64,000 bases of DNA from Obrimoposthia wandeli. Lineage: Eukaryota. The notes under the pieces were generated by a model. That model saw only the letters and a program-made list of their open reading frames with translations. It searched no databases and was not told where the DNA came from. Both the position numbers and the translations under genes were made by a program. This document shows positions 5,372 through 46,156 of this stretch, one piece after another. The number at the start of each line of letters is the position of its first letter. The first letter of the stretch is position 1. The stretch covers positions 1 through 64,000 of the forward strand of contig CDROCS010002813.1 in assembly GCA_977020255.1 (NCBI GenBank). Reading direction: 5' to 3'.

Positions 5372-5431
5372 GATATTATAAGTTTAATTTCCAGAAAACA
5401 GTTACATACTTATGTAAACTAGGAGAAACAC

Positions 5432-9701: not shown

Positions 9702-10243
9702 TGGATTTCGTTCAAGCTACGTACACTGATTGTTTTGATCGCGGATTTCCGGGACAAATTTTTAACCCGGCTTCAACTGATGGAAATTCTTCGTTTCATT
9801 ATCCTACTAGTACGCCTGTTTTTATTGGCCGAGCTGTTAAGGGTGTAGCCCTTACTGATGAAAATAATATTGCATCTGGTATTGCTCTTGCTGATGTAGA
9901 TGGAATTACTGAAGCTACAGAAATTGTAGGTATTGTAATTTCTGATAAGCAAGCATCTGTTGATGATGATGGTAATGCATACCTTCCAGCCAATACTATG
10001 GCAACGGTTATGCGTTTTGATGAAAGTGGGTTAATTTATTCTAGAGTCGTCGTTGCTGTTGCGGCAGGTGATTCTGTTTTTGTTGCTACTGCTGCTGTTA
10101 ATGATGCAAATATTGCAGTTGGTGAATTCACTAATGCTGCTGGTACTGGTCTTTTAGATACTACTTTGAAATTCTATAAGGGCGCTGATGCTGGTAAAGC
10201 TTCAGTTATTTCTATGAAAGCTATTGTTCCTGTTGCTCCATAA
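9701..10243 (+). CDS. Head decoration/cement protein
   Basis: Lies between scaffold and major capsid genes. TAATG overlap favours the start at 9701 (MDFVQ). Confidence 0.7.
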   Translation: MDFVQATYTDCFDRGFPGQIFNPASTDGNSSFHYPTSTPVFIGRAVKGVALTDENNIASGIALADVDGITEATEIVGIVISDKQASVDDDGNAYLPANTMATVMRFDESGLIYSRVVVAVAAGDSVFVATAAVNDANIAVGEFTNAAGTGLLDTTLKFYKGADAGKASVISMKAIVPVAP

Positions 10244-10290
10244 ACAGATTATACTTTCTGTAAACTAGACTATTTCTAACAAAAGGAAAT

Positions 10291-23609: not shown

Positions 23610-24431
23610 ATGGCTTCAACAAGAGACTTTAAGGCTCCAGTTGTTTTCGCAGAAAATGCCGATACAGTAATACCTCCAACGCCAACTCAAGGTCAATCAT
23701 ACCGAGATGTAGCAAGTACAACTGAACAGTTGATACAAGATGGAATGAAATACAACACAATCGCTGATTCAGCGACTCTATTTAACCAATTTCAATATAT
23801 GTTAACTAAATTTGCTCAAGAGGTCGAGCAGACTGGTATTCTTGGCTGGTCAGACTTGGTGGATTACAAATTACATGCTAGATGCATAGGTAGTAATGGG
23901 GTTGAATATCGAGCAAAGGTAGCTAACGGGCCGAATGGAGGAGGAGTGGCAGATCCAATAAGCTCTAGTGTTGAATGGCAGGAGGTTAGACCGCAATTTG
24001 GGATTGATGAAACTGTATTTATTGCAGCAGATCGAACGCCGAACGAGCAGGGCTATCTTGGCACATGGGTTCAAATTGAAGCAGGCGCATCACTAGGAGC
24101 TGTAAATGCAGGCGACCCATTAATAGGAACTATTACTGGGGATAACGACCCAGACGTACCATTAAAGGAACACGCTCACATTGCTACATTTTCTGGTAAT
24201 GCTTTACCCCCCCACGGGCATGAATTAAATATTGACTGGATTGGAATCTCTGGCAGTAATAATCTTTCAGGGGGTGGCACTACATGGAATAAGACCAACA
24301 GGCCCACAACAACCGTTTCAGCAGGCACTCCAACTGGCTCAGTTTCAGTTCAAAATGCAGGTGACGCAGTAGGTACATTTAACGTTCAAGGTAAGGTACT
24401 TAATGGCGTTTGGTGGAAACGAACAGCATAA
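23610..24431 (+). CDS. Tail fibre with T4 gp10 C-terminal-like domain
   Basis: GTWVQI, HAH/HGH and C-terminal WWKRTA. Confidence 0.75.
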   Translation: MASTRDFKAPVVFAENADTVIPPTPTQGQSYRDVASTTEQLIQDGMKYNTIADSATLFNQFQYMLTKFAQEVEQTGILGWSDLVDYKLHARCIGSNGVEYRAKVANGPNGGGVADPISSSVEWQEVRPQFGIDETVFIAADRTPNEQGYLGTWVQIEAGASLGAVNAGDPLIGTITGDNDPDVPLKEHAHIATFSGNALPPHGHELNIDWIGISGSNNLSGGGTTWNKTNRPTTTVSAGTPTGSVSVQNAGDAVGTFNVQGKVLNGVWWKRTA

Positions 24432-24436
24432 ATAAA

Positions 24437-24472
24437 TTACTTCTCGCATTAAAGTTATGATGCGAGAAGTAA
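24437..24472. terminator. Hairpin between the convergent tail fibre and GT25 genes
   Basis: 13-bp perfect stem TTACTTCTCGCAT / ATGCGAGAAGTAA with a 10-nt loop. Confidence 0.75.
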
Positions 24473-24475
24473 ATT

Positions 24476-25135
24476 TCATTTTAGATACTTTTTTTTATTT
24501 TTCAGTCTGATAATTTTGTAATAAATATTTTTACTCTTTTTTGGAATGTTTTGTTGAGCTATTGATTTTAATAATTTTCTTGGCATTCTTGAAGAGATGA
24601 CAATATTAGAGCAAAAAGAATAAGTCCCACATAGTTTGTATTTAGTAAGCCATGTGTCAACTTGAATTGAAAACCCATTTTTATTTGCTCTATTCATAAG
24701 CATATCCGCAAAATAAGGTGTAATTCCGTAACTATACAATGGTAAAAACCCATTTTCTTTTTTAAAGGTAGAATCTATAGATTCACGACCACCAGTCTCA
24801 GAGAAAGATATAACGCCATATTTGATAATCTCAATATTAAGTTTATGTAAATTAGTCTTGTAGTGGATTAAAGCGTTATCTTCAATTATTAATGCAGGTT
24901 CTAATGATTTAGAAACCATTTCCCAAGCTAAATAATGCGCTTTCCATGCTGCAAACTGTCCAATCGAAAGTGGTCTTGATTGAAAAGATAGTTGCCTATT
25001 CTTGTAGGTATTATTTTCATTGATTAGATTATCTTGAGGGGGTGTAGTCATAAACTCGAAATCAATATCTTTAAGTTGATTTGATATACTTTCTCTCCTA
25101 TCTGCGTCCCCACTTGTTAGAACTATTATTCTCAT
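24476..25135 (-). CDS. Glycosyltransferase family 25 (LgtB/Lex2B-like LPS/LOS biosynthesis)
   Basis: DRRE...DFEF, LSIGQFAAWKAHYLAW (equivalent to GC..SH..W) and LIIEDN (EDD-like) motifs. Confidence 0.8.
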   Translation of the reverse strand: MRIIVLTSGDADRRESISNQLKDIDFEFMTTPPQDNLINENNTYKNRQLSFQSRPLSIGQFAAWKAHYLAWEMVSKSLEPALIIEDNALIHYKTNLHKLNIEIIKYGVISFSETGGRESIDSTFKKENGFLPLYSYGITPYFADMLMNRANKNGFSIQVDTWLTKYKLCGTYSFCSNIVISSRMPRKLLKSIAQQNIPKKSKNIYYKIIRLKNKKKYLK

Positions 25136-25385
25136 TAATATTACTCTCTTTTAATTGACTTTATTTATTTTCAAAATAAAACCTTACTTTAACTAATAAA
25201 CCCAATGATCACCCAAAAGCCAAACCCACGCAAGCGAATTACCCCACCTGTAAATTACACCCTATCAAAAGACTACCCCCTAACGAGATAATAATAAATA
25301 TCTATCATTATTATCTGAGTAAGATATACAAATCTAAAGCAAGATGATACCCTCAAAAAAAATAGCCCTTGCGCAATTTGCGCGT

Positions 25386-25415
25386 AAAGCCTTGCGTTAT
25401 CGCAGGGCTTTTTTT
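25386..25415 (+). terminator. Rho-independent terminator-like hairpin
   Basis: AAAGCCTTGCG-TTAT-CGCAGGGC followed by T7. Confidence 0.6.
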
Positions 25416-25469
25416 GTTTAATAACTTAGCTCAAGCCAAAAACAATACAGAAATAGATTAAAATATAAC

Positions 25470-25495
25470 CGCTCAAAAACGACCGTTTTTGAATA
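25470..25495. promoter_or_regulatory. Candidate res crossover site (hix/gix-like)
   Basis: CGCTCAAAAACG-AC-CGTTTTTGAATA: two 12-bp half-sites matching TCnnAAAC/GTTTnnGA around a 2-bp core, upstream of the serine recombinase. Confidence 0.65.
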
Positions 25496-25606
25496 CAAAA
25501 TGATACTATCATAAATATATCCAAAACTGCAATCAAAAACCCCCTTTATATTAAAGAACGCATGATATATAATGAACACCCCATTTTGAACACGCAAGGT
25601 GTTACA

Positions 25607-26170
25607 ATGTCACGTATTTTTGGATACGGTAGAGTATCTACCACAGAACAAACTCTAGAGCAACAATTAACAGTTATTAGAAACAACGGGTATGACGTTA
25701 CGGATGGGCGTTTCATAACTGATGAAATAAGCGGTAGCGTGTGCGCAATGAATCGAACCAACTTCAAAAATCTAATTGAGAATAAAATAGAAAAGGGTGA
25801 TTCCCTTATCATTCATAAATTAGATCGTTTAGGTCGGGATAATATAGATATTCAAAAAACGATATCAATGCTGTCTAGTATGGGGGTGAATGTTTTTATA
25901 TTGGATTTGCCAGTTTCAGACCTTAGTACGTCAGAGGGGAAATTGATGCTCCAGATGTTTGCTACATTTGCAGAATTTGAAAGGAATCGTATATCAGAGA
26001 GAACTAAAGAGGCGTTAGCTCAAAAGAAGAAAGATGGTGTAAAGCTTGGTAGGCCAAAATTAGATTTATATGAAAAAGTTCAATCATTAAAGAGTGAAGG
26101 CAAAAGCCAAAGTATGATCTCAACGTCATTAGACGTTAGCATATCAACAGTTCGTCGTAACTGGAATTAA
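25607..26170 (+). CDS. Serine recombinase (resolvase/invertase family)
   Basis: GYGRVST (catalytic Ser), KLDRLGR, FAEFERNRISERT, GRPK and a C-terminal HTH. Likely start 25607. Confidence 0.93.
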   Translation: MSRIFGYGRVSTTEQTLEQQLTVIRNNGYDVTDGRFITDEISGSVCAMNRTNFKNLIENKIEKGDSLIIHKLDRLGRDNIDIQKTISMLSSMGVNVFILDLPVSDLSTSEGKLMLQMFATFAEFERNRISERTKEALAQKKKDGVKLGRPKLDLYEKVQSLKSEGKSQSMISTSLDVSISTVRRNWN

Positions 26171-26179
26171 GGTTGAAAA

Positions 26180-26446
26180 ATGGAAAAAGTATATATAGAG
26201 AAATTTACTAGTAGAAAGTGGAGCTTAACATCGCCATCTATAGCATCAAGGCTTTTATATAGATTAACCGGGGGCGCTCATGGTGAAGAGCAATCGATTA
26301 AGCTAGATGAAGATAAAATGGCTAGATATTCTACTGGCAAGCCACAACAACCACTTGTAAATAAGTTCCCAATGACTGATGCACTTCCAGTGCACATTAA
26401 TTGCCGTTGTTATTCATTCCTAGTTAACCGTTACGATAATGAGTAA
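26180..26446 (+). CDS. Hypothetical protein with an HINCRC motif
   Basis: 88-aa ORF; AAGG Shine-Dalgarno. Confidence 0.55.
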   Translation: MEKVYIEKFTSRKWSLTSPSIASRLLYRLTGGAHGEEQSIKLDEDKMARYSTGKPQQPLVNKFPMTDALPVHINCRCYSFLVNRYDNE

Positions 26447-26650
26447 TTTGATTTATTAAAATATTAAATTTATTGACCGACATCTTACCTTCAATGATAT
26501 TAGTATCATTATTTTTGATTAATTATGTAAAAGTCTTTATTATTAAATACTTAGATCCCCCCCCCACTTACAGGTAGACTTTAACTGCTATCTGTAAGTT
26601 TTATCTATACTTAAAGGGAATAATCATCATGAAGATTATAGAGGCTTATT

Positions 26651-27959: not shown

Positions 27960-28014
27960 TTATTTATGTATAATAAAAGTATGATTTAATGTTCCTTAAT
28001 ATGCAGAGGGATTT

Positions 28015-28281
28015 ATGAAAGCATTCTTGAAAGCAAATGGTGGTATGGTCACATTAATGACAACAATCATTGGTGTTGGTTTTTGGATTACTAGCAGCAT
28101 GGCAGATCTTCAAGTTGAACAAGCGGAGAAATTCCAAATTCAACAAGAAAAAACCGATGCTAAATTTCAAGCTCAGTCAGAAAAATTTTATTCTATGCTA
28201 GAAAAAATAAATACAGTAGATAAAAGCTCAATGAACAGAGATAATAAAATTGAGATAACACTCGCCAAACTAGACAAATAA
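28015..28281 (+). CDS. Hypothetical single-pass membrane protein with coiled coil
   Basis: GAGGG Shine-Dalgarno; transmembrane segment at about residues 10-26. Confidence 0.7.
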   Translation: MKAFLKANGGMVTLMTTIIGVGFWITSSMADLQVEQAEKFQIQQEKTDAKFQAQSEKFYSMLEKINTVDKSSMNRDNKIEITLAKLDK

Positions 28282-28309
28282 AAAAAAGGAGCTTATAGGC
28301 TCCTTTTTT
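28282..28309. terminator. Bidirectional terminator
   Basis: A-run, GGAGC-TTATAG-GCTCC, T-run between convergent operons. Confidence 0.85.
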
Positions 28310-28340
28310 ATTGATTAATATTCTCATTTTACCGTTGGTG

Positions 28341-28613
28341 TTATCGGTTTCTAACATCATCAAAAACATGAAAAACTACTGATCCATTACCCAGCTGATA
28401 AGTCCCTATGTATTTTCCAACATTGCCAATGTCAGATCCAGTTCCATGAATTGATATAATTCTAATTTCTTTTTCAGCATCAATATCAACTTTAGCCCAA
28501 AGACATAAGTAACCATTTTGCATTTGAACAGTTAGCAACTCCGCATTTTTTGGGATTTCAATTTCTTGGTCATCTTCATGTTGAAGGATGTACTTCCAGA
28601 TTTGTTTCATCAA
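28341..28613 (-). CDS. Small phage protein (DUF7352-like)
   Basis: IWKY.L...LWA.VD...GTG....YIGT...VFHVF pattern. Confidence 0.7.
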   Translation of the reverse strand: MMKQIWKYILQHEDDQEIEIPKNAELLTVQMQNGYLCLWAKVDIDAEKEIRIISIHGTGSDIGNVGKYIGTYQLGNGSVVFHVFDDVRNR

Positions 28614-28838
28614 TTACTTCTTAGTCGCAGTATTTTTAAAATGGTCATTCATTTGTTTTGCTATTGTGGCGTAAGGCTCACCAACTCCAAAAACAACTGA
28701 ATCTTCACACATAGAATCAAGATTTATGGTAAATCCATTATATTTAATTTCCTTAATATTGGGTTTATCCTCTTCGCCAATTGACTTTAGAATTAAATTA
28801 AACGCTCTTTTTCCTGCATAAAATCCGTCTATATTCAT
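28614..28838 (-). CDS. Hypothetical protein
   Basis: Tight packing in the minus-strand operon. Confidence 0.65.
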   Translation of the reverse strand: MNIDGFYAGKRAFNLILKSIGEEDKPNIKEIKYNGFTINLDSMCEDSVVFGVGEPYATIAKQMNDHFKNTATKK

Positions 28839-28839
28839 T

Positions 28840-29433
28840 TTATGATCCTAATGGTTTTATTACGATCTTATATTCTGCTTTTGCTGGCACTGATGATGCA
28901 GACATAGGAGAAGAGCCTCTAGGTAAATGACTATAATCAGCAACGGCATACCCTACCTCTTCATAAGTAACTTCTAGCATATCCAAAAGATTGGTTATTA
29001 ATTTTCTTGTTTTAGGATCATTGACTACATACTCACCATCAATAAAAACATTATTAGCACCAACAAAGGAACCGCCGTATTTAGATGGTGCTGTATGGGT
29101 ATAATCATTGCTATGAGATGGACACGGAACATTTATATTTAATGAATGGTGATGGGGACGAAAGAAAAATTCAGCATCTTTATAACAATAAACAACTGAT
29201 AATTTATCTCCATCATCACACATCACACCACCTGATGATTTATGAATAAAAAATTCTCTAGCTTCATTTAAACTTGTAACTTTATGTCGATGCACTGGCT
29301 TATTTCTAATATCTTTGTTTGGAATTACTGGGTCTTTAAATCTTTCAGCATCAGAGTAAGGAGGCAATTCATTAACTGTTAACTTCTCTGTATCCCCAGT
29401 GCTTGTAACGTATCCTGTTGGTGTTCTTTTCAT
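28840..29433 (-). CDS. Hypothetical protein
   Basis: AAGGA Shine-Dalgarno; operon packing. Confidence 0.7.
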   Translation of the reverse strand: MKRTPTGYVTSTGDTEKLTVNELPPYSDAERFKDPVIPNKDIRNKPVHRHKVTSLNEAREFFIHKSSGGVMCDDGDKLSVVYCYKDAEFFFRPHHHSLNINVPCPSHSNDYTHTAPSKYGGSFVGANNVFIDGEYVVNDPKTRKLITNLLDMLEVTYEEVGYAVADYSHLPRGSSPMSASSVPAKAEYKIVIKPLGS

Positions 29434-29451
29434 GATTAGTATCCTTATTAA

Positions 29452-29784
29452 TTATTGATTTATATACGTCATAATAATTTCCAAACTAGAACCATAAACA
29501 GAATAACTTCCAATTGAACTATCTGGATACCATTGAATCAACCATAAATTATTATCCGAGATACACTTATCCATATCATCCTGATTAACAAAATCATCAA
29601 CATCTAAATCAAGATCTTCAATGCGGTCTTTTACTGTTCTATGGCTACCAATATGAGCGTTATGTTCAATATAAAGACCGAACTTATGGCTTGGTAAATC
29701 ATCTTGAAATTTATTATATTCATATTTCGTTTTACTCATTTTATGTATGCATAGCCCTAAACCCTTTTCATCTTCATTATTCAT
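29452..29784 (-). CDS. Hypothetical phage protein
   Basis: LWLIQWYPDSSIG motif; operon packing. Confidence 0.7.
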   Translation of the reverse strand: MNNEDEKGLGLCIHKMSKTKYEYNKFQDDLPSHKFGLYIEHNAHIGSHRTVKDRIEDLDLDVDDFVNQDDMDKCISDNNLWLIQWYPDSSIGSYSVYGSSLEIIMTYINQ

Positions 29785-29813
29785 GTCTATTTGTCCATTA
29801 ATTCATCTGTTGA

Positions 29814-30296
29814 TTAAATGTGAGTAATTACTGTAAATCGTTTCTGTGTCGAAAGAATGCCTATTACATCTTTATGCATGAGACATAACTCTCGTTTAGC
29901 CATGTTATAAGCCCCTAAACCACCGTATTTAGTGGCGCTGAAGGTTCTTTGTTCCCATCCTATTACTTCACCATTTTTATTAAACTTGGTCTTTCTTGCT
30001 TCGTAAAATGTAACGCCGCATTCACTTATCTTTTTCATTGGTTCTAATGAATGAGGGAGCCGAGTAAATAAATATTTATCATTTAAAATTCGATCCCAAT
30101 CTTTACCCCAATAAAATTTCCCAATTGCATTTCTTAATTTTTTGGTTTTTATTAATGCTTTTTTTTCTCCGAGTCTAACGAATCCAACAGAACGGTGCGC
30201 TTTGGTATCATCAGGAAGTGGAACAGTAACAGCAAAGCATGTTCTTTTTTTTGAGATAAATCGTTCTCCAGTATTTGAATCTAAATTACTAATCAT
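29814..30296 (-). CDS. Putative AP2-domain DNA-binding protein
   Basis: RTFSATKYGGLGAYNMA and RSVGFVRLGEKKAL AP2-like segments. GAGG Shine-Dalgarno before ATG 30296. Confidence 0.5.
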   Translation of the reverse strand: MISNLDSNTGERFISKKRTCFAVTVPLPDDTKAHRSVGFVRLGEKKALIKTKKLRNAIGKFYWGKDWDRILNDKYLFTRLPHSLEPMKKISECGVTFYEARKTKFNKNGEVIGWEQRTFSATKYGGLGAYNMAKRELCLMHKDVIGILSTQKRFTVITHI

Positions 30297-30588
30297 TATT
30301 ATTCGCCTCACTTCCATTAACTTCATTATTGATGATAGAGATAATGGCATTATATCCAAGCTCCGTTAAAGCCCATGAAATCCGACCTGAACGACTTCTA
30401 CCGTTTGCTAATAGGTTATTATCAACCAACCTAAAACAAGAGCGACTAAGCACCTCTTGCCTCACCTCGCACACCCTAGATTCATTAACCTTAGCCATTA
30501 GCTTCTTATGCGTTATAGACTTATCACCATCTATAAAAAAGTAAACCATGCTTTTCAATGTTGTTCGTTGCAATTCAGATAATCTCAT
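30289..30588 (-). CDS. Putative winged-helix DNA-binding protein
   Basis: LSRSCFRLVDNNLL...WALTELG pattern. GGGGGAG Shine-Dalgarno before ATG 30588. Confidence 0.55.
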   Translation of the reverse strand: MRLSELQRTTLKSMVYFFIDGDKSITHKKLMAKVNESRVCEVRQEVLSRSCFRLVDNNLLANGRSRSGRISWALTELGYNAIISIINNEVNGSEANNND

Positions 30589-30625
30589 TCGCTCCCCCTT
30601 AAAGTCATAGTGTGACAATAAATAA

Positions 30626-30664
30626 AAAAGAGCTTAAAGTCAACTTGTGACTTTAAGCTCTTTT
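30626..30664 (-). terminator. 17-bp perfect hairpin, intra-operon terminator
   Basis: AAAAGAGCTTAAAGTCA / TGACTTTAAGCTCTTTT with a 5-nt loop; U-rich tail on the minus strand. Confidence 0.75.
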
Positions 30665-30689
30665 AAGTTAATCTAGTTTACCGTTAGGA

Positions 30690-30878
30690 TTAACCGTTTT
30701 TAAGTTCATTAATATTGATAGTTTGAATTTCAATACCTGTGATTTTTGATACTTCTTCTAAATCACTAATACTAACCGTTAATGATACATACTCATCATC
30801 AATCATAGAGTTAATGAATAGTTGGGCTATATTGCCGCTTTTGCCACCTTGAGTAGTTTCAAATTCATATCTCGTCAT
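30690..30878 (-). CDS. Hypothetical protein
   Basis: AGGA Shine-Dalgarno before ATG 30878 (MTRYEF). Confidence 0.6.
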   Translation of the reverse strand: MTRYEFETTQGGKSGNIAQLFINSMIDDEYVSLTVSISDLEEVSKITGIEIQTININELKNG

Positions 30879-30885
30879 TTTATTC

Positions 30886-31140
30886 CTATTTTTCAGATTG
30901 TTGTAACGGTTGCTCATTCTGCATTTGAGTTAAATCACCAATCACTGCCGAGTTTACTTGTCTGTATCTAAATCCATTGATTTTTACACTTCTGAATTTC
31001 TTTTTGTTTGATTTACTTACTTTCATTTGAATCAAAAATGGCTCGCAACTGTAGTCGTATATTGCGACATCTATCCATTTAGACCACCAATGAAATCTTT
31101 TAATATCTATATCGACATCCGTTAAAATATTAACTTTCAT
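30886..31140 (-). CDS. Hypothetical protein
   Basis: Operon packing. Confidence 0.65.
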   Translation of the reverse strand: MKVNILTDVDIDIKRFHWWSKWIDVAIYDYSCEPFLIQMKVSKSNKKKFRSVKINGFRYRQVNSAVIGDLTQMQNEQPLQQSEK

Positions 31141-31155
31141 TTCTAGTTCACCGTA

Positions 31156-31836
31156 TTAATCGTCTGTATCTTCAATGTAGTTGAAGTTTTCATCTAACTC
31201 ATAATCACTTGGTTTAGCGTTATCACCGTGAAGTAAATAGAATGCAAACTTTCTCCATTTAGTTTTTTCTTCATCGGATGAATCGTGATAATTTCCATGC
31301 TCATCACTAAACGTTTTGTTTCCATCAAAAAGAGTATAGTAACCACAATTTGCCCCCATATCTTCATCTGCATAAATAACTGTAATTACTTCATCAGGGA
31401 AATTTTCAGAAAGAGCTTTTAATAGTGGCAATGGATTAGACCAAGCTGTTTGAAACTCAATATATTCATCTTCTATTTTTTGTTGATAAGCATTCCACTT
31501 TGTACCCCACTCTTCACGCTGAAACTCCATAGAATGAATATATCCGTGTTCTCTCACGTTCTTAATCATACAAATAAATCTATCAAATGATTCATCATCA
31601 AGTTTTCTTACATCAGACTCTAAAATATTTTTCATCTCAAAGTTTGAAAGAAACCCATCAGGCTTAAATGGCAAGCATGATTTAGCAAGATTCTCTATAT
31701 CTGCTCGAATCCCATTACCTTGACCGTCATCAAACCCTTTCTTGACCATATTGAAGTCAATGTTTCCATCTTCATTAAGCATTGATTTAAGCACGATTGA
31801 TGACGCTGTGATTTTAGTGGTTACATGGTTTGGCAT
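31156..31836 (-). CDS. DUF1281/YubB ferredoxin-like family protein
   Basis: MPNH start, WGTKWNA, FQTAWSNP and YADED.GANCG motifs. Confidence 0.75.
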   Translation of the reverse strand: MPNHVTTKITASSIVLKSMLNEDGNIDFNMVKKGFDDGQGNGIRADIENLAKSCLPFKPDGFLSNFEMKNILESDVRKLDDESFDRFICMIKNVREHGYIHSMEFQREEWGTKWNAYQQKIEDEYIEFQTAWSNPLPLLKALSENFPDEVITVIYADEDMGANCGYYTLFDGNKTFSDEHGNYHDSSDEEKTKWRKFAFYLLHGDNAKPSDYELDENFNYIEDTDD

Positions 31837-31838
31837 TG

Positions 31839-32147
31839 TTATTTCTCCGAGTTTACAGAAGTGTTGATAGGTTCTTTCACTTCTTCCTGAACGATAGCAA
31901 CCCAACCGCGATCATCTTTACGAATAAAGGCATTCATTAGAGTTTTTGTAACTTCAGTTTGAATTCGCGGCGTAAATTTTAATAAAGCCGTTGAAATCTT
32001 ACAAAACTCTTCAAAATCCACATTGAAAGTGTCATAACAAAAACCGTCAATATCCTCACCATCATCTATAAAATCAGTGATTTCTTGCTCTGATTTTCCA
32101 CCCGCGTATAAACATAATTCTTCTAGTTCAAAACTTGATATAGTCAT
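31839..32147 (-). CDS. Hypothetical acidic protein
   Basis: AGAG Shine-Dalgarno; operon packing. Confidence 0.7.
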   Translation of the reverse strand: MTISSFELEELCLYAGGKSEQEITDFIDDGEDIDGFCYDTFNVDFEEFCKISTALLKFTPRIQTEVTKTLMNAFIRKDDRGWVAIVQEEVKEPINTSVNSEK

Positions 32148-32148
32148 A

Positions 32149-32357
32149 ATAATTCTCTATTTGTCCGATTGGTCATTAAGTTTTTTTATTTCTTTTTCAT
32201 AATCAATAAAAATGAAAAGCCCTGTATCTTCAGCGCACATATTAAGCATTTTATCAAATGCTTCTTTGTTTCTGCCTTTCGTCATTAAGCCGATAATTTC
32301 AGAGTAACCTTGCTTTCTTTCTTGTTTTTTCATGATAATTCTCTATTTGTCCGATTG
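32149..32357. repeat. Exact 23-bp direct repeat (32149-32171 and 32335-32357)
   Basis: ataattctctatttgtccgattg occurs twice, 186 bp apart. Confidence 0.95.
32157..32333 (-). CDS. 58-aa hypothetical protein missing from the ORF track (MKKQERKQGY...LNDQSDK)
   Basis: Translated by hand; AGAG Shine-Dalgarno; exactly fills the gap in the operon. Confidence 0.7.
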   Translation of the reverse strand: MKKQERKQGYSEIIGLMTKGRNKEAFDKMLNMCAEDTGLFIFIDYEKEIKKLNDQSDK

Positions 32358-32912
32358 CGTAAACGGTGAGATTAATTTTTTATGAATAGCAGAAACATAC
32401 TTTGCTTGATGAATAGCATCAGCTAGAGCGTCGTGCTTAACCCCATCAAATGGCATATCACGCTTAGGATTAAAACCAATATCAAGGCCAAGTCGAACAA
32501 TAGTGCGAACATCCATATCATTATAGAAAGCCCACGGAGTATTAAGGCCAACTTGATTGAAAGCATTTTTCATTATAACGTTGTCGAAAGTTGCTCCATT
32601 ACCCCAAACTTTGCATTTTTTATTATTGTCATCAATAAAATTAATAAAGCGCAACAAAACAAGATTAATATTTTCAGCTTTGGAATTATCATAGAATTTA
32701 CTTCGTGCTTCATCAGATTGTTTCATCCACCAAAGCACTGTTGAGACATCCATAACCAAACCAGACGCTACAGCCGTCTCAAGATTGATTTGCTCGTGAA
32801 AAGTCCCTCCAATTTCACCCGTTTCTATATCAAAGAAACATGCACCGATTGACATGATCGCCGCTTTCGGTCTATTACCCATAGTTTCGATATCTAACAT
32901 TAAATCTTTCAT
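32343..32912 (-). CDS. 3'-5' exonuclease, DEDD family (Rv2179c/DUF5051-like)
   Basis: LMLDIETMG, VWGNGATFD, DVRT and HDALADA motifs. Confidence 0.88.
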   Translation of the reverse strand: MKDLMLDIETMGNRPKAAIMSIGACFFDIETGEIGGTFHEQINLETAVASGLVMDVSTVLWWMKQSDEARSKFYDNSKAENINLVLLRFINFIDDNNKKCKVWGNGATFDNVIMKNAFNQVGLNTPWAFYNDMDVRTIVRLGLDIGFNPKRDMPFDGVKHDALADAIHQAKYVSAIHKKLISPFTQSDK

Positions 32913-32959
32913 TTTTACTCCTAATTTACCGATTGTGAGTTCTGTTTACTTAAATAAGT

Positions 32960-32983
32960 ATTTACGTATTTACGTATTTACGT
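32960..32983. repeat. Downstream centromere repeats, 3 x ATTTACGT
   Basis: Overlaps the 3' end of the adaptor gene. Confidence 0.8.
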
Positions 32984-33150
32984 ATTAACTCTTCTACTAC
33001 ATTGGTCATTTTTACATCTTGAATAGCACATTTTGCTTTAAATGCAGCATGCACCTTTTTATCAATATCAGCGGTCAATCTAGCTGTAGGAGTTGAATTT
33101 AATTCCAATATAGCTTTTGGATCATCATTTATTCTTTTTTTGATTTTCAA
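32962..33150 (-). CDS. Partition adaptor (ParG-like ribbon-helix-helix protein)
   Basis: 62 aa; RLTADID..VHAAFKAKCA...MTNVVEELI; overlaps the parA stop. Confidence 0.8.
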   Translation of the reverse strand: MKIKKRINDDPKAILELNSTPTARLTADIDKKVHAAFKAKCAIQDVKMTNVVEELIRKYVNT

Positions 33151-33776
33151 ACTAGCAATCCTTTAATTTCTTGATAAAATCCTTCAAATTCAGATTTCGC
33201 CAATCTGTCACTATATTCAAGAACATTCCCACCAACGGCCGCCGTTCTTACGTATGCTTCTCTGCCAATCAAGCAAGAACGCAATCTTTTAATTCCATAT
33301 TCTTCAATTTCATTTTTAATTTCTGAAAAACTATTTGTTCCTTGTTTTGCATTATTAATTAGAAATCTAGCTAGGGGTTGACCATCGTTAATTTCTTGTC
33401 TTTGCTTTATTAAACTAACAAGGTCAGCACAAGCCCATAAATCATATGGAGAAGGCTTAACAGGAATGATGATTAAATCACTAGCTGCTATGCATGCCGC
33501 TGTAACTTCATTTTTAGCCGGGGATGTATCGATGATAATAAAATCGTAATTCGCGCCAGAACGTTTTATGTTCTTTATCATCGCTGGAGTATTTGCGCCA
33601 ACACAATCAACAAACTTCATACCACCGGCTTCATGCCAATCTGATGCTGAAGATTGCTGAGGATTACCATCAACTAAAAGAACTTCATACTCTCTTGATA
33701 GAGCAGAGGCTAGATTAGTTGCAATAGTAGTTTTCCCAACCCCACCTTTTTGATTACAAATTGATATTACTTTCAT
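33147..33776 (-). CDS. parA: Partition ATPase, short type Ib ParA
   Basis: NQKGGVGKTT deviant Walker A, VDGNPQ and IIIDTSP. Confidence 0.95.
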   Translation of the reverse strand: MKVISICNQKGGVGKTTIATNLASALSREYEVLLVDGNPQQSSASDWHEAGGMKFVDCVGANTPAMIKNIKRSGANYDFIIIDTSPAKNEVTAACIAASDLIIIPVKPSPYDLWACADLVSLIKQRQEINDGQPLARFLINNAKQGTNSFSEIKNEIEEYGIKRLRSCLIGREAYVRTAAVGGNVLEYSDRLAKSEFEGFYQEIKGLLV

Positions 33777-33802
33777 AACTTACCTTATTTACTTAAAATT
33801 AC

Positions 33803-33882
33803 ATTTACGTATTTACGTATTTACGTATTTACGTATTTACGTATTTACGTATTTACGTATTTACGTATTTACGTATTTACGT
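33803..33882. repeat. Centromere/operator, 10 x ATTTACGT
   Basis: Perfect tandem 8-mers between the promoter and the parA start. Confidence 0.85.
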
Positions 33883-33887
33883 ATTAA

Positions 33888-33916
33888 ATAATATTCTTCA
33901 TTACTGAAAATGTAAA
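33888..33916 (-). promoter_or_regulatory. Sigma70-type par promoter
   Basis: TTTACA-17 bp-TATTAT just upstream of the repeat array. Confidence 0.65.
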
Positions 33917-33975
33917 TGCAAACAACATAAACATGAGAGTTGCATATGATAATGATCTAATAGCACTAATCATTT

Positions 33976-34860
33976 TTAAACCATCTCAGCTAGTTCTTGC
34001 TGTAATTCTTGTGCTTTAGTACCAAGACCAAGATATTTCATTGTCATTTGAATCGAGCTATGTCCAAAACTCTCCATAACCTCACCAATATTATTTTGAT
34101 TCCCAGATTTTCCTTTTAACATATTGTATGCAAATGTCTTTCTAAGGCTGTATGCGCTTAGTTTCATTTCAGAGTTAATCTCATCAGCAAACCAATCAAA
34201 GACAGCTCTGAATGCTTTCCATACAGATTGTCGGCTTATGCATCCGCTGAAGTTACGAGATCGATTTGAACCAGAAAGACTTTTGCTAAAAACAAAATCA
34301 TCTTTAGTATTTTTAATTCTTAATATAGATAATTCATCTAATAGTTTTTTCGGGATTTTTTTTGAATCGGCTTTTACTGGGGCGTTAGTTACAGCAAGTT
34401 CAAGACCTTCATAAAAACAATCAACTTCATTATCAGGAATGAATTGAATTATCTTATCTAAATCAAGTTCTAATAAATCAAGTTTCATATGAAGGTTAGA
34501 ATCACCACTCATGGCCGCACGTTTTTTTAATTCATTTTTAGTTACAGATAAATGTTTGTTATATGCTCTTTTTTCTGCTGCTCTAGTTTGTTTATTTACA
34601 ATGATTTTTGCAGTACCAGTATTAAAATCTATATCAGAAAATTTCAATTCTGTTAGGTCGGTAGTTCTCCAACCGGTCGCAACAGCTAAACGGTAAAATA
34701 GAGCGTATTGAGGACCAATCATGGAATTAACTTTTCTTAATATTTTTGTTTGCTGTATGCGATCATAGATAGGAGTTTTAGTATTAACACCAGTTTTATT
34801 TGTGCTTGTAATGCCACTTAAACTGCGTTTTTTTCTGAGCTCTTTAAGAATTTCACTCAT
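33976..34860 (-). CDS. Tyrosine recombinase (plasmid resolvase-like)
   Basis: ATGWRTTDL, AYSLRKTFA and FGHSSIQMTMKYLG; no arm-binding N-terminal domain evident. Confidence 0.9.
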   Translation of the reverse strand: MSEILKELRKKRSLSGITSTNKTGVNTKTPIYDRIQQTKILRKVNSMIGPQYALFYRLAVATGWRTTDLTELKFSDIDFNTGTAKIIVNKQTRAAEKRAYNKHLSVTKNELKKRAAMSGDSNLHMKLDLLELDLDKIIQFIPDNEVDCFYEGLELAVTNAPVKADSKKIPKKLLDELSILRIKNTKDDFVFSKSLSGSNRSRNFSGCISRQSVWKAFRAVFDWFADEINSEMKLSAYSLRKTFAYNMLKGKSGNQNNIGEVMESFGHSSIQMTMKYLGLGTKAQELQQELAEMV

Positions 34861-34988
34861 GATAAAGCCTCTCTTTTAATAAGATTAGCTCTTTGAGAAT
34901 TGGTCAAGCAATTTGAATTAATTGCAAATTTTCTTAATGTTTCTGGAAGTGCTTCACAAATAAGCACTCGAAATGTAAACTGTGTCAT
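34857..34988 (-). CDS. 43-aa ORF coupled to the recombinase (MTQFTFRVLICEALPETLRKF...REALS)
   Basis: AGGATG Shine-Dalgarno; its stop overlaps the recombinase start (ATGA). Confidence 0.55.
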   Translation of the reverse strand: MTQFTFRVLICEALPETLRKFAINSNCLTNSQRANLIKREALS

Positions 34989-35056
34989 ACTTCATCCTAG
35001 GTTATTAGGTTTTGAATAATCCCTAATCAATGTTAGTAGCATTGGTTAGGGGTGAT

Positions 35057-35257
35057 TTAACTTTCAATACCCCCACTATACTTCATGTCATGAAGTGTTT
35101 CAAGGGTTTTTAAATGATGCTCTACAAATTTTGGGATTTTTAATATTCCTGAATTGTATTTTTCATGAGCGCTCATTGATATTCCTAGCAAATCATTCCA
35201 ATCTTTAACTTTTAATCCTAATTTTTTTCTTAATTCTTTATATTTATCTACTGTCAT
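35057..35257 (-). CDS. Small XRE-family HTH regulator
   Basis: KELRKKLGL....NDLLGIS.SAHEKY.SG pattern. Confidence 0.75.
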   Translation of the reverse strand: MTVDKYKELRKKLGLKVKDWNDLLGISMSAHEKYNSGILKIPKFVEHHLKTLETLHDMKYSGGIES

Positions 35258-35279
35258 ATTTATTCCTATGTGATTGATT

Positions 35280-36260
35280 TTAGATTGATTTTAATCTAAA
35301 TAGAACTTCATTCGCTGTTAGTCCATCATTCCAGTTTAAATTATGATGTTCAGCTTCATCTTTAGTTAGATAACGATTAGCTTCGGTAAAAAATAAAGTA
35401 TCATTTATATTTTTGAATGGCTTTACTTCTATCTTAACAATTGAATTTGTATTCAATGCTTTATCAATTATTTTATCTTTTTTATTTATTTCTTTATTAT
35501 CATATAGATAACTTATTTTAACTTTATAAGCTTTACGACATTTCCTCTCTATTATTTCCATGTTAATTTTAGTGAATTCTGTTTTTTCAATAATTTTCTT
35601 TGCTGCTCTTTTGAAAAAAGAATTATTAAATTCAGTGAATAATTCATATGATTTATGTTTATCGACTGCAAGTGATTCTTTAAATTCATCAACAGTTATA
35701 GTTTTATCAACTACAAAGCCAGAACTGATCCATTCTCGTAATATTAGATATAACTTACCAGAATTTCCATCTGGCAATTGCATGGCACTTAATAGAAATT
35801 GCCCGGTAAAATCCCCGGTCAAACTAGATATTAATGGTTCCATTTCTTTTGCAAATTTAACGTTTACAAATCCGTGACCTTTTGAATAACCAGTTCCATT
35901 TTCGGCAATAGTAAATGGTGCTATCCAATCACTAGGAAGTTCCGGGTTTTTCTTTTTTAATAATCCCTGATCGGCCTCAAGAACGTAACCACGCAGCCCT
36001 CTAACACCTTCAACTATTTGCCGATATGCCGCAGAATAATCAATTTCACATAATTCAGCATAATTTTTCACTGTTATAGTAAATATATTATCTGAGTCAA
36101 ATTTTATAAGAACGTTATTTTTTGAAGAATCTCTTTCAAGTTGAGCTAAACACATAAAAAATAATCTTTTTGATGGCAGTCCCATCCCAATTAAAGCTGG
36201 TCTTGCATCGTTACGTGTATATATTTTCTTAGCCATTTTCAATATTTCCGATCGATTCAT
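35280..36260 (-). CDS. repB: Plasmid replication initiator, Rep_3 (RepE/pi-like)
   Basis: KRLFFMCLAQL, AYRQI, VNVKF..EMEPLI, GKLYLILREW and TVDEFKESL; adjacent iterons. Confidence 0.9.
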   Translation of the reverse strand: MNRSEILKMAKKIYTRNDARPALIGMGLPSKRLFFMCLAQLERDSSKNNVLIKFDSDNIFTITVKNYAELCEIDYSAAYRQIVEGVRGLRGYVLEADQGLLKKKNPELPSDWIAPFTIAENGTGYSKGHGFVNVKFAKEMEPLISSLTGDFTGQFLLSAMQLPDGNSGKLYLILREWISSGFVVDKTITVDEFKESLAVDKHKSYELFTEFNNSFFKRAAKKIIEKTEFTKINMEIIERKCRKAYKVKISYLYDNKEINKKDKIIDKALNTNSIVKIEVKPFKNINDTLFFTEANRYLTKDEAEHHNLNWNDGLTANEVLFRLKSI

Positions 36261-36330
36261 TACTAATCTCTTTATTCTCTTTTAGTTATTAAATAATACC
36301 AAGCGCTTTAACTGCCTGCAATAATTAATT

Positions 36331-36453
36331 TGCCATTGTTTCACTGACTAGCTGCCATTGTTTCACTGACTAGCTGCCATTGTTTCACTGACTAGCTGCC
36401 ATTGTTTCACTGACTAGCTGCCATTGTTTCACTGACTAGCTGCCATTGTTTCA
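36331..36453. repeat. Iterons: 5 x 22 bp plus a 13-bp partial
   Basis: TGCCATTGTTTCACTGACTAGC in tandem, with two-helical-turn periodicity. Confidence 0.93.
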
Positions 36454-36790
36454 TGCTAAAAATCTTTTGGATTCATATGTTTACATTACCCCCCAATAGA
36501 ATAATAGATTAATATAAATAATAAAAATAAGGAGTCACTAGCTTTCAGGCTGTGGATAAGTTTCATATTGATAACTTTCGCAAGCTCAAGATTACCAACA
36601 ATTACTAAATGATTTATTTGATGCTTATTGATTTCGCTCCGCGTCAAATTTTTTTATTTTTAATAGATGTGATCAACATATTAACAATATCAGAATTAAA
36701 TATGTATCGTACTCGTTATATGTATTTTTTTGATAAATATAATTAATAATAATGCAAAGTAGTAACTATTTTATCTTTAGAGAGTTAAGT
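36454..36790. other. Remainder of the replication origin: DnaA box and AT-rich tract
   Basis: Perfect DnaA box TGTGGATAA at 36551-36559; long non-coding A/T runs. Confidence 0.7.
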
Positions 36791-45541: not shown

Positions 45542-46083
45542 TGGATTTCGTTCAAGCTACGTACACTGATTGTTTTGATCGCGGATTTCCGGGACAAATT
45601 TTTAACCCGGCTTCAACTGATGGAAATTCTTCGTTTCATTATCCTACTAGTACGCCTGTTTTTATTGGCCGAGCTGTTAAGGGTGTAGCCCTTACTGATG
45701 AAAATAATATTGCATCTGGTATTGCTCTTGCTGATGTAGATGGAATTACTGAAGCTACAGAAATTGTAGGTATTGTAATTTCTGATAAGCAAGCATCTGT
45801 TGATGATGATGGTAATGCATACCTTCCAGCCAATACTATGGCAACGGTTATGCGTTTTGATGAAAGTGGGTTAATTTATTCTAGAGTCGTCGTTGCTGTT
45901 GCGGCAGGTGATTCTGTTTTTGTTGCTACTGCTGCTGTTAATGATGCAAATATTGCAGTTGGTGAATTCACTAATGCTGCTGGTACTGGTCTTTTAGATA
46001 CTACTTTGAAATTCTATAAGGGCGCTGATGCTGGTAAAGCTTCAGTTATTTCTATGAAAGCTATTGTTCCTGTTGCTCCATAA
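45541..46083 (+). CDS. Head decoration protein (copy 2)
   Basis: Identical to 9701-10243. Confidence 0.7.
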   Translation: MDFVQATYTDCFDRGFPGQIFNPASTDGNSSFHYPTSTPVFIGRAVKGVALTDENNIASGIALADVDGITEATEIVGIVISDKQASVDDDGNAYLPANTMATVMRFDESGLIYSRVVVAVAAGDSVFVATAAVNDANIAVGEFTNAAGTGLLDTTLKFYKGADAGKASVISMKAIVPVAP

Positions 46084-46156
46084 ACAGATTATACTTTCTG
46101 TAAACTAGACTATTTCTAACAAAAGGAAATATGATGAGTAAAAAATTACTACAGCC

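What the first reader, a model, noticed from the sequence alone, without database searches (positions are those of the whole stretch)
28322..32934. Conserved ~15-nt linker at about eight gene junctions of the accessory block: a cassette-like array
Seen on the minus strand, always at a gene boundary: AATCGGTAAATTAGGAG (32934), AATCGGACAAATAGAG (32356 and 32170), AACTCGGAGAAATAA (31853), AATACGGTGAACTAGAA (31157), AATCTGAAAAATAGGA (30899), AACGGTAAACTAGA (30685), AATGGACAAATAGA (29799) and AACGGTAAAATGAGA (28336). In four cases it supplies the upstream stop, so unrelated proteins all end S-D/E-K. It often supplies the next Shine-Dalgarno as well. Established: boundary/linker sequences have been proposed for module exchange in lambdoid phages. 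Inference: a gene-cassette shuffling system with portable stop-plus-RBS joints, possibly served by one of the three recombinases, or a shared RNA-level control site.
Basis: partly seen in the sequence, partly recalled or inferred. Interest (0 to 1): 0.75.

Follow-up and report, generated by a model that had tools for sequence, protein, structure and literature searches.

The report
Repeated 28-base signal at phage gene junctions
A ~36-kb phage-plasmid, probably of a Vibrio-family host, carries a real, strand-oriented 28-base motif at about eight gene junctions. It looks like the junction repeats already described in other phages (start-associated sequences, stoperators), and I found no support for a recombinase-driven gene-cassette system.

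Summary
The quoted strings are at the stated minus-strand positions. The core CGGNNAANTAG occurs 8 times against 0.99 expected.

The unit is longer than described. It is a sharply bounded 28-mer with invariant A, C, G about 13 nt upstream of the CGG. Six or seven of the nine sites are robust on leave-one-out and cross-class tests. j4 and j5 are moderate and j8 is weak.

The 3' third (AAnTAG plus purines) is this genome's ordinary stop-plus-Shine-Dalgarno pattern, seen before 32 of 54 genes. Only the 5' two-thirds are special.

One further strong copy lies outside the block, just upstream of the major capsid gene. Two copies precede terminators, not genes.

The motif has no RNA fold, no Rfam match, no sigma-70 promoter and no recombinase-type dyad. 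The partition site is a different 8-bp repeat.

No close relative of the element was found, so breakpoints could not be compared. Other phages carrying similar small genes have their own repeated junction units.

Best reading: a cis-acting recognition site of the start-associated-sequence/stoperator class. Exchange at the junctions is at most a by-product; j2 and j3 are identical over 27-28 nt.

The parts
32920..32947 (-). Junction motif j1 (28-mer), between the ParG-like gene and the exonuclease gene. TAGGAG serves as the SD.
   Evidence: Leave-one-out rank 10 of 71,530. Cross-class rank 10.
32342..32369 (-). Junction motif j2. It encodes the last 8 codons (SPFTQSDK) and the stop of the exonuclease. 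Identical to j3 from -6 through the next start codon.
   Evidence: (rank 6). Family conservation of the exonuclease ends at the left edge of the motif.
32156..32183 (-). Junction motif j3, at the end of the 58-codon ORF (tail ..DQSDK, stop).
   Evidence: (rank 8).
31838..31874 (-). Junction j4, a moderate member with an ambiguous register. It supplies the tail NSEK and the stop of the 102-aa ORF.
   Evidence: Rank 22 or 98. Ranks 268-344 in the cross-class test.
31142..31169 (-). Junction motif j5, a moderate member. The stop of the DUF1281/Api92-like gene lies in the spacer, and the next ATG follows 2 nt after the motif.
   Evidence: rank 33. Family conservation ends at the left edge of the motif.
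30885..30912 (-). Junction motif j6 (CTG in place of CGG). It supplies the tail QQSEK and the stop of the 84-aa ORF, and TAGGA serves as the SD.
   Evidence: rank 10; rank 9.
30672..30699 (-). Junction motif j7, after the last gene of the first operon. It is followed by a terminator hairpin (30626-30664), not by a gene.
   Evidence: rank 9; rank 11.
29786..29813 (-). j8, a weak or doubtful member (TGG; upstream AC shifted by one base).
   Evidence: Rank 140 of 71,530. The sequence is error-prone.
28323..28350 (-). Junction motif j9, at the end of the DUF7352 gene. TGA stands in place of TAG. It is followed by a terminator hairpin (28282-28309).
   Evidence: rank 9; rank 6.
10242..10269 (+). 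A further strong copy outside the block. It lies in the intergenic gap between a 185-aa virion protein gene and the major capsid gene (ATG 10291). The same 28-mer recurs at 46082-46109 in the second copy.
Evidence: Context. Capsid identified.
28341..32912 (-). The block holds 12 small genes in two operons. First operon: exonuclease 32343-32912, then ORFs of 58, 102, 226 (DUF1281_C), 84 and 62 aa. Second operon: ORFs of 99, 160, 110, 197, 74 and 89 (DUF7352) aa.
32962..33776 (-). ParA-like (33147-33776) and ParG/RHH-like (32962-33150) partition genes, directly upstream of the block. No terminator separates them from it.
33803..33890 (.). About 11 tandem 8-bp repeats (ATTTACGT) upstream of parA, with three more at about 32955-32985. 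This is the likely partition site/operator, and it is distinct from the junction motif.

Best explanation
The motif is a discrete, asymmetric 28-nt cis-acting signal. Numbered from the first G of CGG, it reads wAAC at -17 to -14, then 12 loosely conserved bases, then C-G/T-G-w-n-A-A-n-T-A-G-r. It is specific to this phage-plasmid.

It sits at the 3' edge of one gene and the 5' edge of the next, always in the direction of transcription. Most copies lie in a block of small non-structural genes behind the partition genes, and one lies in front of the major capsid gene.

I infer that it is the recognition site of one sequence-specific factor, a protein or possibly an RNA, encoded by the element or its host. 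That factor would co-regulate these genes at the junctions. It could act in either of two ways:
- On the mRNA next to the ribosome-binding site, as proposed for the start-associated sequences (SAS) of Cluster K mycobacteriophages.
- On the DNA as an orientation-dependent block to transcription, as shown for the stoperators of Cluster A mycobacteriophages.

I lean to the first (roughly 0.3 against 0.2 within the 0.5 given). The copies cluster in one non-structural block and abut start codons, and no copy overlaps a predicted promoter.

The last third of the motif is simply the genome's usual stop-codon-fused-to-SD pattern. Because genes are packed tightly, the site overlaps unconstrained C-terminal tails, which is why unrelated proteins end in S-D/E-K.

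Shown: existence, bounds, enrichment, orientation and position of the motif, and the absence of fold, promoter or dyad. Inferred: that a factor binds it, and what binding does.
For: - Enrichment and cross-validation.
- Sharp 28-nt bounds, with invariant columns interspersed among variable ones and random flanks. This is the pattern of a recognition site, not of uniformly decaying homology.
- All strong copies are co-oriented with local genes: minus strand in the block, plus strand at the capsid gene.
- The motif is kept at nucleotide level whether it is coding (j2, j3, j6) or non-coding (j1, j7, j9, capsid). Matrices trained on one class find the other at ranks 6-17 of 71,530.
- The family-conserved parts of three proteins stop within 0-1 codon of the motif's left edge, so the site occupies unconstrained tails.
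- Described analogues have the same anatomy. SAS/ESAS are asymmetric, one orientation, in the non-structural half, next to starts, may hold the upstream stop, and precede genes of different families (PMC3203893). Stoperators are asymmetric and oriented with transcription (PMC6550527). T1/Stevie has a 22-bp repeat. Mordin has a 26-bp repeat before 8 genes.
Against: - No binding factor is identified. Candidates (99-aa ORF, 212-aa winged-helix protein, 66-aa HTH, 62-aa RHH) are only candidates.
- Two strong copies (j7, j9) have no gene downstream, which fits poorly with control of translation initiation.
- The distance to the next ATG varies from 2 to 22 nt.
- No copy overlaps a predicted promoter, and the copies are few (8-10) and clustered, unlike stoperators.
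- There is no conservation evidence from relatives, because none was found.
- The function of the closest analogues (SAS, T1 and Mordin repeats) is itself unknown.
- The sequence is from an error-prone assembly.
Confidence: 0.5

Rival explanations
1. Recombination linker. The conserved joints are where small promoterless genes are swapped in and out, either by homologous exchange between joints (as with PeSLs of T4-type phages) or by a site-specific recombinase of the element. The block would then be a cassette array: site-gene-site-gene...site.
For: - The layout of the first operon is 7 sites around 6 genes, with a site after the last gene of each operon.
- j2 and j3 are identical over 27-28 nt, including the spacer and start codon, and flank a 58-codon ORF.
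- Homology to distant relatives ends at the motif's left edge for three genes.
- Other elements with similar small genes also reuse junction units: L226 and L227, L233.
- PeSL-mediated shuffling is documented (PMC2839356, PMC4122927).
Against: - Apart from j2/j3, the copies share only about 12-16 of 28 bases, with a variable middle. That is poor substrate for homologous exchange and leaves no conserved crossover core for a site-specific enzyme.
- There is no dyad of binding arms, no hairpin and no attC-like length.
- There is no promoter-terminator composite as in PeSLs.
- One strong copy lies between two core head genes.
- Ends of protein homology coincide with gene ends anyway, so that point is weak.
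- No second genome carries the motif.
Confidence: 0.2
2. A relic with no function of its own. One ancestral stop/SD junction was copied each time a gene was added or duplicated, and the copies are decaying.
For: - The j2/j3 identity shows such copying happens.
- Spacer identity of 0.45 is above the random 0.28.
- Pairs of identical leaders occur in L227 and L233.
Against: - Conservation is strongly uneven: 8 invariant columns among near-random ones, with abrupt bounds.
- The motif is kept across coding and non-coding contexts and on the other strand at the capsid gene.
- Uniform decay would not give this pattern.
Confidence: 0.15
3. Nothing special: ordinary stop-codon plus Shine-Dalgarno composition of an AT-rich, tightly packed genome.
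For: - 32 of 54 gene starts have TAR plus purines within 24 nt.
- The first de novo motif is the generic SD-ATG.
- Mu-like relatives show TAAGGA/TAGGAA joints.
Against: - The CGG and the upstream AC-n-G are not part of stop or SD, and C is rare on this strand (13.6%).
- Core: 8 matches against 0.99 expected.
- In j5 the TAG is out of frame and is not the stop.
- 50-fold enrichment over related loci.
Confidence: 0.05
4. Secondary binding sites of the partition system: the ParG-like RHH protein spreads or silences downstream of parAG.
For: - The block starts directly after parG, with no terminator between them.
- The par repeat unit and the motif share GTAAA(T/C). In j1 the upstream AAAC continues the 8-bp phase of degenerate par repeats.
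Against: - The true par repeats are a clear, different 8-bp tandem array.
- The shared pentamer is common in an AT-rich genome.
- Copies up to 4.6 kb away, and one at the capsid gene, do not fit a centromere.
Confidence: 0.05

Closest known systems
Start-associated sequences (SAS/ESAS) of Cluster K mycobacteriophages (Pope et al. 2011, PMC3203893)
   Same: A short asymmetric repeat in one orientation, confined (almost) to the non-structural part of the genome. It lies a few bases upstream of start codons, may contain the SD core and the upstream gene's stop codon, and precedes genes of unrelated families. About half the copies have an upstream extension. Function unknown.
   Different: Different sequence, host phylum and phage type. 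SAS is 13 bp and 3-7 bp from the start; here the unit is 28 nt and 2-22 nt from the start. Two copies here have no downstream gene and one precedes a structural gene. The ESAS extension is a 17-bp inverted repeat; here there is only a weak AC-n-G/C-n-G-T symmetry.
Stoperators of Cluster A mycobacteriophages (L5 gp71; PMC6550527, PMC9283540)
   Same: Asymmetric sites oriented with transcription, mostly in short intergenic gaps and not associated with promoters.
   Different: Stoperators are 13 bp, number 20-30 per genome, are spread over both arms, and include true operators in promoters. Here there are 8-10 copies, 7-9 of them within 4.6 kb, and none in a predicted promoter. No cognate repressor is known.
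22-bp repeat of T1-like phages (Stevie, PMC4319613) and 26-bp repeat of Felix O1-like phage Mordin (PMC4611695)
   Same: Examples from Gram-negative hosts of asymmetric, intergenic, transcription-oriented repeats. In Mordin they lie directly before the SD and start of 8 small hypothetical genes. Function unknown.
   Different: Unrelated sequence: my matrix scores none of the Mordin copies. The Mordin copies are nearly invariant and sit in longer intergenic leaders. Those phages are virulent; this element is a phage-plasmid.
PeSLs (promoter-early stem-loops) of T4-type phages (PMC2839356, PMC4122927)
   Same: Repeated units between small ORFan genes of a plastic region, running from the upstream stop codon to the downstream SD and start. 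They are shown to be points of modular exchange.
   Different: PeSLs are defined by a sigma-70 promoter plus a terminator-like stem-loop, and neither is present here. A PeSL-like unit does occur in the relative L226.
Integron gene cassettes (attC arrays)
   Same: A same-orientation array of small promoterless genes, each followed by a repeated site, with a site after the last gene.
   Different: There is no attC-length (57-141 nt) imperfect palindrome and no fold. The joints are 10-50 nt. No IntI-type integrase was shown. One copy lies at a core structural gene.

Membership tests
SAS/ESAS-type start-associated repeat | Short asymmetric repeat present in one orientation relative to transcription | tested here: met
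   All strong copies are co-oriented with local genes.
SAS/ESAS-type start-associated repeat | Lies within a few bases (3-7) of the start codon of a downstream gene and occupies the RBS position | tested here: inconclusive
   The ATG follows 2-22 nt after the motif at 7-8 copies. The SD is inside the motif at j1, j4 and j6 but separate at the capsid gene. j7 and j9 have no downstream gene.
SAS/ESAS-type start-associated repeat | Restricted to the non-structural part of the genome and associated with genes of different families | tested here: met
   7-9 copies are in the small-gene block, before unrelated genes. The one exception is before the capsid gene.
SAS/ESAS-type start-associated repeat | The Cluster K consensus sequence itself | tested here: not met
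   The consensus printed in PMC3203893 is unrelated to this motif. The resemblance is in anatomy only.
Stoperator system | 20-30 sites spread through early and late operons, some acting as true operators within promoters | tested here: not met
   8-10 sites, of which 7-9 lie within 4.6 kb. None coincides with a predicted sigma-70 promoter.
Stoperator system | Bound by the prophage repressor, blocking elongation | not testable with these tools
   Candidate DNA-binding proteins exist, but no binding data can be had here.
PeSL | Sigma-70-like promoter within the unit | tested here: not met
   The consensus scan places no promoter on the motifs, except a 9/12 match at j9. Overall, promoter-like sites are fewer than in shuffles.
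PeSL | Stable stem-loop (terminator/attenuator) within the unit | tested here: not met
   Folds of nine 71-nt junction windows gave z-scores from -1.7 to +1.0, with no shared structure. Hairpins occur only after j7 and j9, as ordinary operon terminators.
Integron cassette array | attC site: 57-141 nt imperfect inverted repeat folding as a hairpin at the 3' end of each cassette | tested here: not met
   Joints are 10-50 nt with no fold.
Integron cassette array | IntI-type integrase next to attI and a cassette promoter | not tested
   The two tyrosine recombinases hit only the general PF00589 family. No IntI-specific test was run. They are not adjacent to the array in the integron manner.
Xer/dif-like or other tyrosine-recombinase core site | Two inverted binding arms around a conserved 6-8 bp crossover region | tested here: not met
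   The arms are not inverted copies (4 of 11 in j7 by inspection of the rows). The central region is variable. Only an AC-n-G ... C-n-G-T symmetry exists, and it is not convincingly enriched on its own.
Partition centromere of a ParA/ParG (type Ib) system | Array of short tandem repeats next to the par genes | tested here: not met
   That role is filled by the 8-bp repeats at 33803-33890 and about 32955-32985. The junction motif is dispersed and different.
Curated RNA families (Rfam 15) | Match to a covariance model | tested here: not met
   No match at gathering score in 1-38700. Only one chance-level match (E 0.68) in 28000-33300.

The most novel reading that the evidence does not exclude
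The 28-mer is the joint of a hairpin-less gene-cassette array in a Vibrionaceae phage-plasmid. Small promoterless genes would be gained, lost and reordered by exchange at this site, and the j2/j3 pair would be a fresh insertion. This would make it an integron-like or PeSL-like gene-shuffling device of a new type that also carries the stop and ribosome-binding site for its neighbours.
Probability: 0.12. Interest if true: 0.8.

Novelty: new member of a known kind. Interest (0 to 1): 0.4.

Why it matters
Short oriented repeats at gene junctions have been noted in several phage groups. Only the mycobacteriophage stoperators have a demonstrated function; the SAS, T1 and Mordin repeats remain unexplained.

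This is a clean new example with three useful properties:
- It is in a Gram-negative phage-plasmid.
- It has sharp bounds.
- It is kept both inside coding tails and in non-coding gaps.

That gives a compact case in which expression data could show what such signals do. It also shows how a nucleotide-level signal can impose a shared C-terminal tail (S-D/E-K) on unrelated proteins, which is a caution for annotation.

If the joints also prove to be exchange points, they would bear on how accessory genes of phage-plasmids are shuffled.

Tried and rejected
**Searches for relatives, all without a usable result**
- Megablast of the block and of the structural region against INPHARED and PLSDB found nothing.
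- Exact look-up of the exonuclease found nothing on record.
- Relatives of Rep, ParA, the exonuclease, the DUF1281 protein and the endolysin share single genes only. They lie in Mu-like phages, plasmids and other elements, and none carries the motif (IMG/VR, GTDB genomes and the protein collection).
- The exact 16-mer gave 8 chance hits in IMG/VR.
- A bipartite 14-base pattern gave 118+ single chance hits and no cluster.
- The exact 22-mer gave 0 hits in JGI metagenomes.

**Sites and patterns set aside**
- Core-only matches at 26420-26430 (-) and 34691-34701 (+) score only 8.4 and 3.8 with the full matrix, so I treat them as chance.
- Sites at 5413 and 6686 (+) looked good only after I had added them to the training set, which is circular. 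6686 lies inside the portal gene, which is intact in copy 2.
- The palindromic half-site pattern ACNG-N10-CNGT gives 13 in the unique genome against about 3.7 expected. Other spacings reach 8-11 through codon periodicity, so it is not independent evidence.
- Unbiased counting of contiguous 12-mers was swamped by A/T runs and GAT-codon repeats.

**Readings rejected**
- Sigma-70 promoter, RNA structure, Rfam family, tRNA and defence-gene context via PADLOC: all negative.
- Invertase (gix-like) sites: no clear inverted pair, and no relation to the motif.
- An antisense or small-RNA partner in 26171-26650: no promoter/terminator support.

None was entered into a tool, script, note or this report, and none is used as evidence.

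Full report
**Context**

The window holds no N. Bases 1-28136 match 35793-64000 at 97.5%, so the window is about 1.8 turns of one ~35.8-kb element.

The two copies differ by 218 mismatches and 360 gap openings, and different genes are interrupted in each:
- Copy 1: integrase, both terminase subunits and portal.
- Copy 2: tape measure, invertase and endolysin.

This looks like the wrap-around of a circular molecule in an error-prone assembly, not two diverged prophages. The block under study (28137-35792) is present once.

The element is a myovirus-type phage-plasmid:
- Head, sheath, tape-measure and baseplate genes on the plus strand.
- A lysis module.
- A Gin-like invertase.
- A Rep3-type initiator with 22-bp iterons.
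- ParA plus a ParG-like RHH protein.
- Two tyrosine recombinases.

The best relatives of Rep and of the exonuclease come from Aliivibrio, Enterovibrio, Photodesmus and Shewanella at 63-79% amino-acid identity. The host is therefore probably in the Vibrionaceae. The capsid is under 32% identical to anything in INPHARED.

**The observation**

The block is two operons, each closed by a strong terminator hairpin (30626-30664 and 28282-28309):
- Operon 1: exonuclease (PF16473), then ORFs of 58, 102, 226 (DUF1281_C), 84 and 62 aa.
- Operon 2: ORFs of 99, 160, 110, 197, 74 and 89 (DUF7352) aa.

Operon 1 follows parG with no terminator between them. A promoter-like site lies upstream of parA.

**Is the motif more than chance?**

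Yes.
- CGGNNAANTAG occurs 8 times against 0.99 expected, and five of those lie on the minus strand within 2.3 kb.
- In 1.45 Mb of loci fetched around relatives of Rep, ParA and the exonuclease, it occurs at 0.05 per kb and never clusters.

Aligning the sites without gaps on the GG shows that the unit is longer than described. C at -14 is present in 9 of 11 sites on a strand with 13.6% C.

In seven independent strong sites the columns behave as follows:

| Region | Result |
|---|---|
| Columns -15 A, -14 C, -12 G, -1 C, +1 G, +4/+5 AA, +7 T | invariant |
| Pairwise identity, -17 to -14 | 0.74 |
| Pairwise identity, 12-nt middle | 0.45 |
| Pairwise identity, core | 0.72 |
| Pairwise identity, beyond -18 and +11 | 0.28-0.34, the random level |

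The unit is therefore a sharply bounded 28-mer.

Leave-one-out scoring ranks j1, j2, j3, j6, j7 and j9 at 10th or better of 71,530 positions.

A matrix trained only on non-coding copies finds the copies that encode protein tails at ranks 9-17, and the reverse test gives ranks 6-14. This is one nucleotide-level motif, not a shared peptide.

It lies at 10242-10269 (+), in the gap before the major capsid gene, and is identical in the second copy.

**What is ordinary in it**

- De novo EM on the 48 nt up to and including the start codon (45 upstream plus ATG) of 54 genes first returns the generic SD-spacer-ATG.
- 32 of 54 starts have a TAR triplet followed by purines within 24 nt.
- Mu-like relatives show the same TAAGGA/TAGGAA joints without the CGG.

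With the start codon left out, the best 11-mer found de novo is the CGG..AA.TAG core (LLR 46.7, null maximum 39.4). In j5 the TAG is out of frame and is not the stop, so it is conserved as sequence.

**What it is not**

- Not an RNA structure. Nine junction windows fold no better than shuffles and share no structure, and there is no Rfam match.
- Not a sigma-70 promoter.
- Not a PeSL, which needs both a promoter and a stem-loop.
- Not an attC site, because the joints are only 10-50 nt.
- Not a tyrosine-recombinase core. The arms are not inverted copies and the middle varies. The AC-n-G ... C-n-G-T symmetry of the invariant columns is suggestive, but the pattern is not convincingly enriched by itself once other spacings are counted.
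- Not the partition site. That is an array of 8-bp repeats upstream of parA and after parG.

**Position relative to genes**

- The upstream stop lies anywhere from -21 to +20 within or beside the unit.
- The next ATG follows 2-22 nt after the unit.
- j7 and j9 have only a terminator downstream.

For the three genes with recognisable families, family-level conservation ends within 0-1 codon of the left edge of the 28-mer (exonuclease; DUF1281 protein; DUF7352). The unit therefore occupies unconstrained tails. This explains the shared S-D/E-K endings.

**Relatives**

I could not find any close relative of the element or any other DNA with a cluster of the motif.

The searches did show that other elements carrying similar small genes reuse junction units of their own:
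- A hairpin-plus-leader unit before four consecutive genes in L226, and a shorter one in L227.
- Three pairs of identical leaders in L233, a marine Rep3-type phage-like contig.

**Literature**

The literature describes the same kind of thing:
- SAS/ESAS in Cluster K mycobacteriophages.
- Stoperators in Cluster A.
- A 22-bp repeat in T1-like phages.
- A 26-bp repeat before eight small genes of Felix O1-like phage Mordin, which I checked in the record. It is unrelated in sequence.

PeSLs show that such regulatory joints can also serve as exchange points.

**Explanation**

The bounded, asymmetric, transcription-oriented, position-specifically conserved unit is best read as the recognition site of one factor that acts at these junctions (confidence 0.5).

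I lean to action on the mRNA next to the ribosome-binding site, for three reasons:
- The copies cluster in a non-structural block.
- They abut start codons.
- None overlaps a promoter.

The two copies before terminators argue against a pure translation-initiation role. They keep open a DNA-level roadblock or a gene-end role.

The cassette/linker reading (0.2) has one real observation in its favour, the j2/j3 identity around a 58-codon ORF, plus the site-gene-site layout. It lacks every structural hallmark of a recombination site that I could test. A functionless relic (0.15), ordinary composition (0.05) and secondary ParG sites (0.05) are less likely.

**Limits**

- The sequence is noisy, and weak sites may be affected.
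- Gene starts were taken from ORF lists, not from a gene caller.
- The EM and the matrices are my own scripts.
- No binding or expression data exist.

None was put into a tool, note or this report, and none is used as evidence.

Break positions are not listed.

Noticed in passing
window 1-28136 and 35793-64000: The window is about 1.8 turns of one ~35.8-kb element. The overlapping copies are 97.5% identical and differ mostly by indels (218 mismatches, 360 gap openings). In copy 1 the frames of integrase, small and large terminase and portal are interrupted. In copy 2 those of tape measure, invertase and endolysin are interrupted. This looks like an uncorrected long-read wrap-around of a circular molecule.
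   Followed up: partly
window 33803-33890 and about 32955-32985: About 11 tandem copies of an 8-bp unit (ATTTACGT) lie upstream of parA, and three more overlap the end of the ParG-like gene. This is the likely partition site/operator of a type Ib ParA/RHH system.
   Followed up: partly
window 36309-36475 (and 519-639): Five to six 22-bp direct repeats lie next to the Rep3-type initiator gene. They are iterons of the plasmid origin.
   Followed up: no
window 30615-30664 (-): The 17-bp-stem terminator that ends the first operon overlaps a promoter-like site (TTGACT-17-TATTGT) for the second operon. This is a composite terminator-promoter, the one PeSL-like arrangement in the block.
   Followed up: no
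window 32157-32333 (-): A 58-codon ORF with no family match is flanked by two junctions identical over 27-28 nt, including spacer and start codon. This suggests a recent insertion or duplication at the joint.
   Followed up: partly
L226 2000-3545; L227 560-1380; L233 1750-3480 and 4880-5115: Unrelated elements carrying similar small genes each reuse their own junction units. L226 has a GC hairpin plus leader before four consecutive genes. L227 has a shorter leader before two genes. L233 has three pairs of identical leaders.
   Followed up: partly
window 26420-26430 (-) (also 62290-62300) and 34691-34701 (+): Two further exact matches to the 11-nt core lie antisense to the local genes: one in the gap after the invertase, one inside the 294-aa recombinase gene. 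They score poorly with the full 28-nt matrix and are probably chance.
   Followed up: partly
window, unique genome 1-35792: The palindromic pattern ACNG-N10-CNGT occurs 13 times against about 3.7 expected, 6 of them in the junction motifs. Other spacings reach 8-11, so the excess is uncertain.
   Followed up: yes
window 23610-26170: A tail-fibre gene, an oppositely oriented 219-aa ORF and a Gin/Hin-type invertase suggest an invertible host-range segment. No clear pair of inverted crossover sites was found.
   Followed up: partly
window 26171-26650 (+): A ~480-nt stretch between the invertase and the holin-like gene has only an 88-codon ORF with no family match. Its status as coding or non-coding is open.
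   Followed up: partly
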